Part shown: positions 36,501 through 39,500 of the stretch, in pieces | Layout of the letters: every line of letters begins with the position of its first letter | Position numbering within the stretch: the stretch's first letter is position 1 | NCBI RefSeq assembly: GCF_947568905.1 | Contig: NC_079172.1 | Location: 60,884,001 to 60,948,000 of the forward strand | DNA length: 64,000 bases | DNA from: Ostrea edulis | Lineage: Eukaryota | Reading direction: 5' to 3' | Notes under the pieces: model-generated | What the model saw: the letters and a program-made list of their open reading frames with translations, nothing else | The model's database searches: none | Told to the model about the DNA's origin: nothing | Program-made: the position numbers and the translations under genes

Positions 36501-39500
36501 TACAACAGAAACCCCTTTCGTGGCGAAGCCATAGCTAAACTGAAATATTTTTTGATATTTTTGATATTAAAAGTAACTATCTTGTTTATCTATCAATGGG
36601 TGCCTTCTGCCATGGTGTACGCCGGAGATCGATAATGACCAATTTCCCACATCATTGATCACGTGCACCCATGGCAGCTTATCAAGATAATTTAACACTT
36701 TGAAATAGACTTTTGTACTAAAAATACCGTGGCAAATGGTGATAGCGAATTTGACATTTTAACGAGAATTTTAAGTAATAGGAAAAAAGTTCTTAGAAAA
36801 ATGCAGCGTTATAATGAAAACGGCGATGAATTGAGTGGCAATAATTCGAGAATTAACTGTACCCTCAAATCCACAGATTGTAGACAAAATGGTGCACTGC
36901 AAATGACGGCTGTCAGTGGCAGAATTCCTATGTTATCAAGCATTCCACTATGAACATCCATAATTCTCCGGTGATACCAATACAATTAATTACTGATCAA
37001 ACAATACTTCATTTCAGAGGCTCATTACTCTTATATGCGGGGGGACTACAATTAAATGTGAACTTAAAGAACCCTACACATTTTTACAGTTCATCAATTC
37101 TATTCATTTTTAAAAAAAAAAATTCTAGTCTAAGAATAAAATTGATGATATTATGATGAATAATAGTTTCTCCATCATTAAGGTGTTAAGAAAAAAAACC
37201 CAATGAGATAAGTATGCCATCAAGACACATATACTTTGAGCTTTCTATTCATTGCTAATGTTATGCTTTCAAAGTTGTAACTGTAATAATGATTCTACTT
37301 CTTAACCAAACCCTCTACTGAATGTGTCCTTGATATCATGATATCCATTTCACAAAACAACATATATTACATGTATTGAAAATACATGCTGTTTTTTTTT
37401 CAACATACACATGTCACTGGAGAAAACATAACAGGAACATAATAAGAAATAAATTTCTCTTTTTGTTAAGTTGAAATAAAGAAAAACACTGATGGATGTG
37501 CAGTTTTTCTGGTTATAATACATTCAATGATTTTTATTTGGTTGCTCGTAAGAAATGTAGTGCGTTTGATTGCTGGTCTAGGAGCTAGGCAGCAGTACGT
37601 GAGCGTGACCTACTTCTACACATAACAGCCCAGTAAGAAGCCTCTGTCGAACATTTACAAACCACTGAGAAAAACGAAGGAAGCTGTACGTCCACCGTGA
37701 CCTGAAAAACACGACTGACCAACTACGCTACATCTAAATCTCCAGCCATTGGCTGTTTGTTGGCTTTGGTCGGTGTTTGGTCATCTAACTGTTAACCAAA
37801 CACCAAGACCAATTTTGTACTCACCAGTGTGACAAACAAGTGGTAGAAAATGAAATAGATTGCTACAATTGGGTAGAAGCGGTCAGTTTTCCACATTGTG
37901 ATTTGCATCACTTCGGTCCAGCCCTTATTCGCTAGGATTTGAAACATAGACATGAATGCCTGGGGAAAGAGAAGTTCAGAACCATTAAAGCATCTTATTA
38001 CAATAACAAGTATTTAGAAGTCAGTTATTACCCAGCTGCACTTTGTCTAGTGCTGGTTGCGTGTGTGTATTCCCATCTTACACATCAAACTGCAATATCT
38101 GTGATGCCTTCATTTAACTGAATTTTATCATGATGTAAACTTTTTATCACCTATTTTTCATATTTTCATAATGGCTGTACGCATTAATATCAGAATTTTT
38201 CTTTTCATTATAAATATAGCCCTTAAATTTAGTCCCTTTGCTAAAAAGTATTTCACAACTCAACTCCAGCGAACAAATGACTAGGTGTGTACACCTCGAT
38301 TTGTCTGTGCAGCTGGGTACTGACTTATTGAAATGTGCCCTCTGCCTGCACTTTGGTGAACATGCTGTTCTCTCTGAGCGCTCATCACCTGCATGCTTTC
38401 AAATACACCAGATTTGTTAGTCCATCACCAAGGATACAGTAGTTCATCACCATGGTAACCATTGTGTTGTGAGTAAACAGAATTAGAGTTTTACAGATCA
38501 AAGTTATAAGGAGAACAGTCCACACAAGGCAATCATTTCTTTTCTGCAAATTACAGATAAAAATTCTGTAGAGAACATTTCACGTGAGACTGGATTCATA
38601 GTGAGATTTGTGTTGTTAATATCAAGTATGAATTCTTAATTTTCTGATAGTTTTCGTAGAAACATGATTGGGGGGGACCATTCTCCTTGGCTATCATTAA
38701 TGGCACACAACCCTGGTAATGCACGATTCTTCTCAGGATGGTATCCTTTTACTCACCACTGTGACAAATTGGTGATACAAAATGAAATAAATGGCACAGA
38801 GATACGTAAAGAATTGATCGCCTCCAGTTTCCGTTTCCTCGATCACCCCGTTCATCACCTCGATCCAACCCTCTTGTGTCAAAATTTGAAACATGGACAT
38901 AATAGCCTGATTAAAAAGGGTGGCAGAGTTTAAATCGATAAATATCACAAATCAAATTGTCTTCTAATAAAATAAACATTCTATGAAGTGAATTACAATT
39001 ATGACTGCCTGTCAATGTACATGTAGTACTACATGTGTTCATTGTTAAGCAAAGTCACTGTGCCAATTTATGTTTTGTGCTAAAATACAGTATAATCCAT
39101 GATCATAGAACACAGTGATGCTAATCCAAGACTACCATTAGACTGTTACCTATACATACGGTATACATATCAATCACTCTGTCATAATGTACAGGGAGAC
39201 CTTGTCTCTGACAAACTCAGTTACAGTGAATACCTGGCTAAAACAAATCAAGTATGTAACAATTGAATAACATAAAAACAGTAACCAAAACTGATCAATA
39301 ATGAATTTCTAATTAGATATACAACATTTTGAAGCCAATTTGTGATTATAACAGATCAGTTCTGGCACCAAAACTGCAGATTCCTGATAATACAGAAGAG
39401 CAGAATTTCCACACAATATCACTCATCAGCTGATTTAAAAAAAACTGCATAGAAAGTATATATATGTAATAATATTATGTAAATGTATTCAGAGAATATT

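What the first reader, a model, noticed from the sequence alone, without database searches (positions are those of the whole stretch)
37825..38906. Mutually exclusive domain II pore exons switch the filter between EEEE and EKEE
Seen: two paralogous phase-0 exons, [10 protein letters not shown] (38757-38906) and [10 protein letters not shown] (37825-37959), lie between the DII S5 and S6 exons. The other filter residues are fixed E (DI SQEGW, DIII SLEGW, DIV TGEDW). Established: such alternative DII pore exons giving Ca-channel-like EEEE or Na-channel-like EKEE filters were described for Lymnaea and other invertebrate NALCNs (Senatore and colleagues, 2013). The K exon is under 60 codons and absent from the ORF track, so it is easily missed. 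Its ANK context and 5-residue-shorter P2 segment are notable.
Basis: partly seen in the sequence, partly recalled or inferred. Interest (0 to 1): 0.7.

Follow-up and report, generated by a model that had tools for sequence, protein, structure and literature searches.

The report
Oyster NALCN alternative pore exons
This bivalve's sodium-leak channel gene (NALCN) carries two interchangeable copies of the exon that builds one quarter of the pore, one placing a glutamate and the other a lysine in the ion filter; this is a real but already described feature of molluscan NALCN genes.

Summary
On the minus strand, a NALCN gene has two tandem, phase-0, AG/GT-bounded paralogous exons between the domain II S5 and S6 exons: 38906-38757 ([10 protein letters not shown]) and 37959-37825 ([10 protein letters not shown]). 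DI, DIII and DIV each have one pore exon with E, so the filters are EEEE or EKEE.

RNA contigs support alternative use. A 2.9-kb contig from a related species joins the S5 exon directly to the K exon, skipping the E exon. A 3.8-kb contig from a near-identical source carries the E exon and is not joined to the K exon.

The layout (E upstream, K downstream) is exon 15a/15b of Senatore et al. 2013, reported for molluscs, annelids, echinoderms and hemichordates. This is a bivalve member of a known kind.

ANK is a lineage variant shared by relatives. The length gap comes from a longer, fast-evolving loop in the E exon, not a short K exon.

New side observations:
- The K exon is almost frozen at synonymous sites.
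- A ~110-nt intronic element between the exons is more conserved than the exons.
- A 61-bp long-range intronic duplex lies downstream of the K exon, with two compensatory changes.

The selectivity difference is untested in any species.

The parts
40988..41119 (-). Constitutive DII S5 exon (132 nt, phase 0), the upstream splice partner of both alternative exons
   Evidence: Sequence and splice sites. The X11 contig joins 40988 to 37959. It is 97.7% identical in protein in the related species L001-L005.
38757..38906 (-). Alternative exon A (15a-like), 50 aa, filter glutamate (TQEGW); gives EEEE
   Evidence: The X1 3839-nt contig (depth 21) covers 38757-38909 and then leaves the laid stretch, so it is not joined to exon B.
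37825..37959 (-). Alternative exon B (15b-like), 45 aa, filter lysine (ANKGW); gives EKEE
   Evidence: The X11 2921-nt contig splices 40988 to 37959 (GT..AG, skipping exon A), and its laid piece ends exactly at 37825. The protein is 100% conserved in L001-L006.
34391..34465 (-). Constitutive DII S6 exon (75 nt, [25 protein letters not shown]), the downstream splice partner
   Evidence: The homologous exon follows the K exon in L010.
38372..38491 (-). C1: conserved non-coding element in the intron between the two alternative exons. It holds 3x GGUGAUG, 2x GCAUG and one CUAAC.
   Evidence: About 90-95% identical in three oyster-like lineages, against 80-86% for the neighbouring constitutive and E exons. 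No local fold, no Rfam match, no unique pairing partner.
37632..37717 (-). Arm a of a long-range intronic RNA duplex, 108-193 nt downstream of the K-exon donor
   Evidence: Pairs with 35852-35935: 61 bp, -71.5 kcal/mol, next-best partner -46. Conserved in L001-L006, and arm a alone in L011.
35852..35935 (-). Arm b of the long-range intronic duplex, about 1.4 kb upstream of the S6-exon acceptor
   Evidence: There are two compensatory double changes (37712/35856 and 37688/35877) and four one-sided compatible changes against L001-L006. The sense strand folds 12 kcal/mol better than the antisense.
53454..53480 (-). DI pore motif (YEAASQEGW), filter E
   Evidence: NALCN residues 268-302.
20348..20374 (-). 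DIII pore motif (FEVLSLEGW), filter E where vertebrates have K1115
   Evidence: NALCN residues 1091-1132, E 6.5e-24.
10531..10557 (-). DIV pore motif (FRIVTGEDW), filter E
   Evidence: NALCN residues 1368-1401.

Best explanation
These are the bivalve orthologues of NALCN exons 15a and 15b. They form a tandem pair of alternative exons, each encoding the domain II pore loop (pore helix 1, filter residue, pore helix 2, the loop, and the start of S6).

A transcript takes one or the other. The upstream exon puts glutamate at the filter position (EEEE ring, calcium-channel-like). The downstream exon puts lysine there (EKEE ring, sodium-channel-like).

Shown here:
- The exon structure.
- Homology to NALCN DII.
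- The single E in each of the other three domains.
- Spliced transcripts using each exon without the other.
- Strong purifying selection on both exons, extreme for the K exon.

Inferred:
- That the two channels differ in Na/Ca permeation or divalent block.
- That the choice is regulated by tissue or stage.

The classic cis mechanisms cannot enforce exclusivity. The intron between the exons is 797 nt, all sites are U2-type GT-AG, and joining or skipping both exons stays in frame with no stop. Exon choice is therefore most likely set by trans-acting splicing factors working through conserved intronic elements, possibly helped by the long-range RNA duplex downstream of the K exon.
For: - Exon anatomy and phases.
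- NALCN DII identity.
- Paralogy.
- Five pore motifs only. DI, DIII and DIV confirmed.
- RNA: the X11 contig joins 40988 to 37959 with GT..AG ends and shows no E-exon depth. The X1 contig (1 mismatch in 153 nt) runs from the E exon to sequence outside the laid stretch, and no E-to-K joint is listed.
- The same up-E-K-down layout occurs in a related species (L001-L006) and in a distant one (L010, all within 1.9 kb).
- K exons of five lineages form one group (support 93/95, 96% of bootstrap trees).
- Literature: Senatore 2013 describes exactly this arrangement in molluscs and other phyla. It is restated in 2015 and 2025.
- Constraint between the window and L001: the K exon has 5 of 135 nt differences, all synonymous. 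The E exon has 21 of 147, with the pore helices intact.
Against: - No spliced K-isoform contig was seen in the near-identical run X1. Its K-exon coverage is low-depth and unspliced.
- The two isoform contigs come from different runs and different (related) species.
- Contigs cannot exclude rare double inclusion or double skipping, both of which would stay in frame.
- The runs are only guessed to be RNA, although a 3-kb GT..AG skip can hardly be anything else.
- No electrophysiology exists for EEEE versus EKEE NALCN in any species, and earlier snail recordings were confounded by seal leak (PMC4063719).
Confidence: 0.9

Rival explanations
1. The K exon is a silent duplicate in this species. Only the E exon is used, and the K-isoform contig reflects a related species only.
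For: In X1, the run closest to the window, the K exon is covered only by unspliced contigs at depth about 3, while the E-exon contig has depth 21.
Against: - The K exon is 100% conserved in protein and 96% in nucleotides against a species whose neighbouring exons differ by 15%.
- Its acceptor, polypyrimidine tract and donor are intact and conserved in three lineages.
- It is spliced in the related species.
- One sample of unknown tissue cannot show absence.
Confidence: 0.03
2. The E exon is decaying towards loss, as reported for leech and Schistosoma, and the EKEE form is the only functional channel.
For: - The E exon evolves much faster: 7 non-synonymous codons plus one codon indel against the related species, versus 0 for the K exon.
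- It sits on a long branch.
- Senatore 2013 notes that the EEEE exon tends to be lost.
Against: - The changes are confined to the loop between pore helix 2 and S6.
- The pore helices, the filter, the start of S6, the reading frame and the splice sites are intact in both species.
- It is spliced into a 3.8-kb contig at the highest depth seen for this gene in X1.
Confidence: 0.05
3. The two exons are independent cassette exons rather than a strictly exclusive pair, so transcripts with both or with neither also occur at appreciable levels.
For: Both combinations stay in frame with no stop, so nonsense-mediated decay would not remove them. No steric or U2/U12 mechanism enforces exclusion.
Against: - No E-to-K joint and no 40988-to-34465 evidence appeared in four runs.
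- A doubled or missing pore loop would give a non-functional channel.
- Lymnaea cDNAs were mutually exclusive.
Confidence: 0.05

Closest known systems
Lymnaea stagnalis NALCN exons 15a/15b (Senatore, Monteil, van Minnen, Smit, Spafford 2013, PLoS One 8:e55088; PMC3557258)
   Same: - Same gene and same domain II pore-loop-to-proximal-S6 exon.
- Tandem duplicates with the E exon upstream and the K exon downstream.
- Mutually exclusive use giving EEEE or EKEE.
- K exons group together across taxa.
   Different: - The host is a bivalve; the 2013 survey listed only gastropod molluscs.
- The K exon has A-N instead of T-Q before the lysine.
- The E exon carries a longer, acidic, fast-evolving loop.
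- I could not align directly with the snail sequences, because the paper's figures and appendix are held as images only.
Arthropod (myriapod, chelicerate) NALCN exons 31a/31b
   Same: Tandem alternative pore exons in NALCN, E upstream and K downstream, switching a Ca-like ring to a Na-like ring.
   Different: They lie in domain III (EEEE/EEKE) and arose independently. This window has a single DIII pore exon, with E.
Invertebrate Cav3 T-type channel exons 12a/12b (domain II turret)
   Same: Mutually exclusive exons in domain II of a four-domain channel that shift Na versus Ca preference.
   Different: They change the cysteine-rich S5-P turret, not the filter residue itself, and they are in a different gene.
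Docking/selector and intron-bridging RNA pairings in mutually exclusive splicing (Drosophila Dscam, 14-3-3zeta and others; from my own knowledge, not checked here)
   Same: A conserved long-range intronic duplex lies next to one member of an alternative exon pair.
   Different: No competing second selector was found for the E exon. The classic competition model is therefore not met, and a role in splicing is untested.

Membership tests
NALCN exon 15a/15b alternative pore exons (Senatore 2013) | The host gene is a NALCN orthologue (a four-domain channel with NALCN-type pore loops) | tested here: met
   The DI, DII and DIII pieces hit solved NALCN chains best (E 1e-10 to 6.5e-24), far ahead of Cav and Nav channels. 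The short DIV piece hits NALCN and Cav1 about equally.
NALCN exon 15a/15b alternative pore exons (Senatore 2013) | Two tandem homologous exons covering the DII P-loop to proximal S6, with the same boundaries and phase | tested here: met
   150 and 135 nt, both phase 0, both AG/GT, both aligned to NALCN residues 543-588.
NALCN exon 15a/15b alternative pore exons (Senatore 2013) | The upstream exon has E and the downstream exon has K at the filter position, with the other domains E | tested here: met
   TQEGW at 38906-38757 lies upstream of ANKGW at 37959-37825 on the coding strand. DI, DIII and DIV have E.
NALCN exon 15a/15b alternative pore exons (Senatore 2013) | Mutually exclusive inclusion in transcripts | tested here: met
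   The X11 contig skips the E exon and uses the K exon. The X1 contig uses the E exon and is not joined to the K exon. No E-to-K joint is listed. Limits: assembled contigs, two different runs and species, and rare forms are invisible.
NALCN exon 15a/15b alternative pore exons (Senatore 2013) | K (15b) exons of different taxa are each other's closest relatives (one old duplication) | tested here: met
   The K exon is 69-87% identical to K exons of L007, L009 and L010, against 52% to its own E exon. The K group is recovered with 93/95 support. The sequences are short, and the root is not established.
NALCN exon 15a/15b alternative pore exons (Senatore 2013) | The two isoforms differ in ion selectivity | not testable with these tools
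   This is not established for any invertebrate NALCN. For human NALCN, filter mutations alter permeation and divalent block.
Competing-RNA-structure (docking/selector) control of mutually exclusive exons | One docking site that can pair alternatively with a selector next to each variable exon | tested here: not met
   Only one strong pairing exists (37717-37632 with 35935-35852). Each arm's next-best partner is at background level. The E-donor-flank/C1 pairing is not conserved.

The most novel reading that the evidence does not exclude
The choice between the Ca-like and Na-like pore is written into conserved RNA elements. Three observations point this way:
- A roughly 110-nt intronic element between the exons (3x GGUGAUG, 2x GCAUG) is more conserved than the neighbouring exons.
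- A 61-bp long-range duplex loops out 1.1-1.7 kb of the intron downstream of the K exon.
- The K exon's synonymous sites are nearly frozen.

Together these would be a cis-regulatory RNA code for a pore-selectivity switch, which has not been described for NALCN.
Probability: 0.3. Interest if true: 0.5.

Novelty: new member of a known kind. Interest (0 to 1): 0.3.

Why it matters
The finding extends the documented exon 15a/15b switch of NALCN from gastropods to a bivalve, with transcript support. That fits the published statement that almost all lophotrochozoans have it, so it will not surprise a channel specialist.

It adds a natural pair of EEEE and EKEE channels with unusual residues next to the filter (A-N-K) and an acidic loop in the E form. 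Now that NALCN can be reconstituted with UNC79, UNC80 and FAM155, this pair could be recorded to answer the open question of whether EEEE NALCN conducts calcium.

The conserved intronic elements give concrete targets for studying how the exon choice is made.

Tried and rejected
- **Steric hindrance, U2/U12 incompatibility and frame/NMD policing** as causes of exclusivity. All are excluded by sequence: the intron is 797 nt, all sites are GT-AG, and the exons are 150 and 135 nt with no stop when joined.
- **Docking/selector competition.** I scanned both duplex arms, both exons and all conserved blocks against the 7-kb pre-mRNA. Only the arm a/arm b pair stands out.
- **Pairing of the E-donor flank with C1.** z is -2.6 in the window but +0.2 in L001, so I rejected it.
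- **C1 as a structured or known RNA.** Fold z-scores are +0.8 and -0.2 and there is no Rfam family. It shows no pore-like reading frame either, so I do not read it as a third exon copy.
- **The duplex in more distant loci** (L007, L009, L010). Not found.
- **A second DIII pore exon** (31a/31b type). None.
- **Snail exon sequences from the 2013 paper.** The appendices are held as images only.
- **Organism identification from run accessions in papers.** No hits.
- **P0024**, an 894-aa protein in the K-exon cluster, is unrelated and mis-clustered.
- **E-exon word-search hits P0007-P0018.** These are vertebrate-type NALCN exons that differ from the human sequence; I did not fetch their contigs.
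- **Not used:** the large representative protein search and the third word search, because the protein's identity was not open.

Full report
**What is there**

The window holds most of a NALCN gene on the minus strand. Between the domain II S5 exon (41119-40988, 132 nt) and the S6 exon (34465-34391, 75 nt) lie two exons with canonical splice sites, both in phase 0.

- Exon A, 38906-38757: 150 nt, cag|GCT...GTG|gtgagt, translating to [50 protein letters not shown].
- Exon B, 37959-37825: 135 nt, ccag|GCA...CTG|gtgagt, translating to [45 protein letters not shown].

The two exons are 52% identical in protein (E 7e-15). Each aligns to residues 543-588 of solved NALCN structures, with E 1e-12 and 1e-10. 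The best calcium-channel hit is about a million-fold weaker for exon A, and exon B hits nothing but NALCN.

A pore-motif scan of all six frames finds five hits in the 64 kb. All are on the minus strand and in gene order: DI (E), DII-A (E), DII-B (K), DIII (E), DIV (E). The DI, DIII and DIV pieces align to NALCN residues 268-302, 1091-1132 and 1368-1401. DIII has E where vertebrates have K1115.

**Transcript evidence**

No run is recorded as RNA, but several small assemblies behave like transcriptomes. I laid four of them on 35350-41249.

- X11 (a related species) has a 2921-nt contig. One piece ends exactly at 37825 and runs to 37958/9. The contig then jumps to 40987/8-41121, skipping 3028 nt with GT..AG ends. 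That is the S5 exon spliced directly to the K exon, with the E exon skipped. X11 has no depth on the E exon.
- X1 is near-identical to the window: 1 mismatch in 153 nt of exon, and 97.7-99.3% identity in intron pieces. It has a 3839-nt contig at depth 21 whose first 153 letters cover 38909-38757. The remaining 3.7 kb lies outside the laid stretch. It therefore leaves the E-exon donor for something that is not the K exon.
- No E-to-K joint is listed in any run.
- The K exon in X1 is covered only by unspliced contigs at depth about 3.

This is the pattern that mutually exclusive use predicts. The limits are that these are assembled contigs, that the two isoforms come from two different sources, and that rare forms cannot be seen.

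**Comparison with relatives**

A word search with the K exon found short ORFs on public contigs.

- L001-L006 and L012-L014 are one related species. It has the same S5 / E / K order. The S5 exon is 97.7% identical in protein, the E exon 84% (49 aa), and the K exon 100%.
- L010 is a distant organism from a metagenome. It carries S5, an E exon (45 aa, TQEGW), a K exon (48 aa, TQKGW) and S6 within 1.9 kb.
- L007/8 has a K exon with ANKGW (46 aa), L009 has TQKGW (46 aa), and L011 has ANKGW (45 aa).

In a small tree the six K exons fall on one side of a branch (support 93/95, 96% of bootstrap trees). The oyster-type E exon sits on a long branch.

ANK is therefore a lineage variant of the usual TQK. 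The 5-residue difference comes from the E exon of this lineage, which has extra, partly acidic residues in the loop between pore helix 2 and S6. Other E exons, the vertebrate one included, are 45-46 aa.

**Known or new**

Senatore et al. 2013 (PMC3557258) described exactly this: exon 15a (E) upstream and exon 15b (K) downstream, mutually exclusive, in flatworms, molluscs, annelids, echinoderms and hemichordates. Their mollusc list held only gastropods.

A 2015 review says almost all lophotrochozoans have both forms. A 2025 preprint repeats this and states that the selectivity of invertebrate EEEE NALCN channels has not been characterised. I found no paper linking NALCN splicing with oysters.

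Earlier notes of this scan call the genome a flat oyster. I did not check that. On this basis the finding is a new, bivalve member of a known kind.

**How the choice is made**

Three textbook mechanisms are excluded by the sequence.

- The intron between the exons is 797 nt, so there is no steric block.
- All sites are GT-AG with U2-type donors.
- 150 and 135 nt are both multiples of three, and the joined exons contain no stop. Double inclusion or double skipping would therefore escape nonsense-mediated decay.

Most intron sequence does not align with the related species, but a few blocks do.

C1 (38491-38372) lies in the intron between the two exons. It is about 90-95% identical in three lineages, more than the neighbouring constitutive and E exons. 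It holds three GGUGAUG, two GCAUG and one CUAAC, all invariant. It has no local fold, no Rfam match and no unique pairing partner.

A second pair of blocks forms a long-range duplex.

- Arm a (37717-37632, 108-193 nt after the K-exon donor) pairs with arm b (35935-35852).
- The duplex has 61 base pairs and -71.5 kcal/mol. The next-best partner of either arm reaches about -46 or -43, against medians near -30 and -28 with an sd of about 7.
- The sense strand folds 12 kcal/mol better than the antisense, and the arms are single-copy in the window.
- The related species keeps the duplex (-65 to -70 kcal/mol). It shows two compensatory double changes and four one-sided compatible changes. About eleven window pairs are not kept one-for-one.
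- With only two lineages this is suggestive, not proof. An old foldback insertion is an alternative origin.
- No competing selector for the E exon was found, so the classic docking/selector model is not met.

**Selection**

Between the window and the L001 species, the exons differ as follows.

| Exon | Nucleotide differences | Nature of the changes |
|---|---|---|
| K exon | 5 of 135 | all synonymous |
| Constitutive S5 exon | 20 of 132 | 16 synonymous codons, 1 non-synonymous |
| E exon | 21 of 147 | 7 non-synonymous codons plus one codon indel, all but one of the substitutions (I2F) in the loop |

The K exon's deficit of synonymous change is significant (Fisher p 0.001-0.006). It suggests that the exon's RNA sequence itself is constrained.

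**Verdict**

- The function (a Ca-like versus Na-like pore) is inferred from filter chemistry and from mutagenesis of human NALCN. It has not been measured for these isoforms.
- The conserved intronic elements are the only part that goes beyond the literature, and they remain hypotheses.

Noticed in passing
window 38372-38491 (minus strand): A roughly 110-nt non-coding element in the intron between the two alternative exons is 90-95% identical in three oyster-like lineages, more than the adjacent exons. It holds 3x GGUGAUG, 2x GCAUG and a CUAAC, with no fold, no Rfam family and no pairing partner.
   Followed up: partly
window 37632-37717 and 35852-35935 (minus strand): A 61-bp long-range intronic duplex (-71.5 kcal/mol) lies downstream of the K exon. 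It is kept in a related species with two compensatory double substitutions, and the sense strand is favoured by 12 kcal/mol.
   Followed up: partly
window 37825-37959 versus L001:4579-4713: The K exon shows only 5 synonymous differences in 135 nt, while the neighbouring constitutive exon shows 20 in 132. Synonymous sites of the K exon appear constrained. The 40 nt upstream of its acceptor are also nearly identical in three lineages.
   Followed up: partly
window 38757-38906 versus L001:3571-3717: The loop of the E exon between pore helix 2 and S6 evolves fast. There are 7 non-synonymous codons (six in the loop, plus I2F) and a codon indel, and the loop carries an acidic stretch (EETETGGD) absent from other E exons seen.
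   Followed up: partly
window 39697-39908 and 36138-36925: Very high summed contig depth in all four laid runs (hundreds to thousands), with many loose ends. These are likely copies of abundant or transcribed repeats inside the NALCN introns.
   Followed up: no
window about 33900-34390 (minus strand, directly after the S6-exon donor): The intron opens with a tandem array of a roughly 30-nt unit (…cccagaaagacaactaaaatttgactgttt…). Similar minisatellites fill several other introns of the gene (e.g. 47600-49850, 9630-10300).
   Followed up: no
L011:1-1080 and L011:1930-2180: In a third oyster-like lineage the orthologous introns carry a tRNA-derived SINE-like insert upstream of C1. A tandem-repeat expansion also lies between the K exon and duplex arm a, which moves the arm from about 108 to about 400 nt from the donor.
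   Followed up: no
protein cluster of P0002: An unrelated 894-aa protein (P0024) is filed in the same 90% cluster as a 50-aa K-exon ORF. This is a clustering artefact of the collection.
   Followed up: yes
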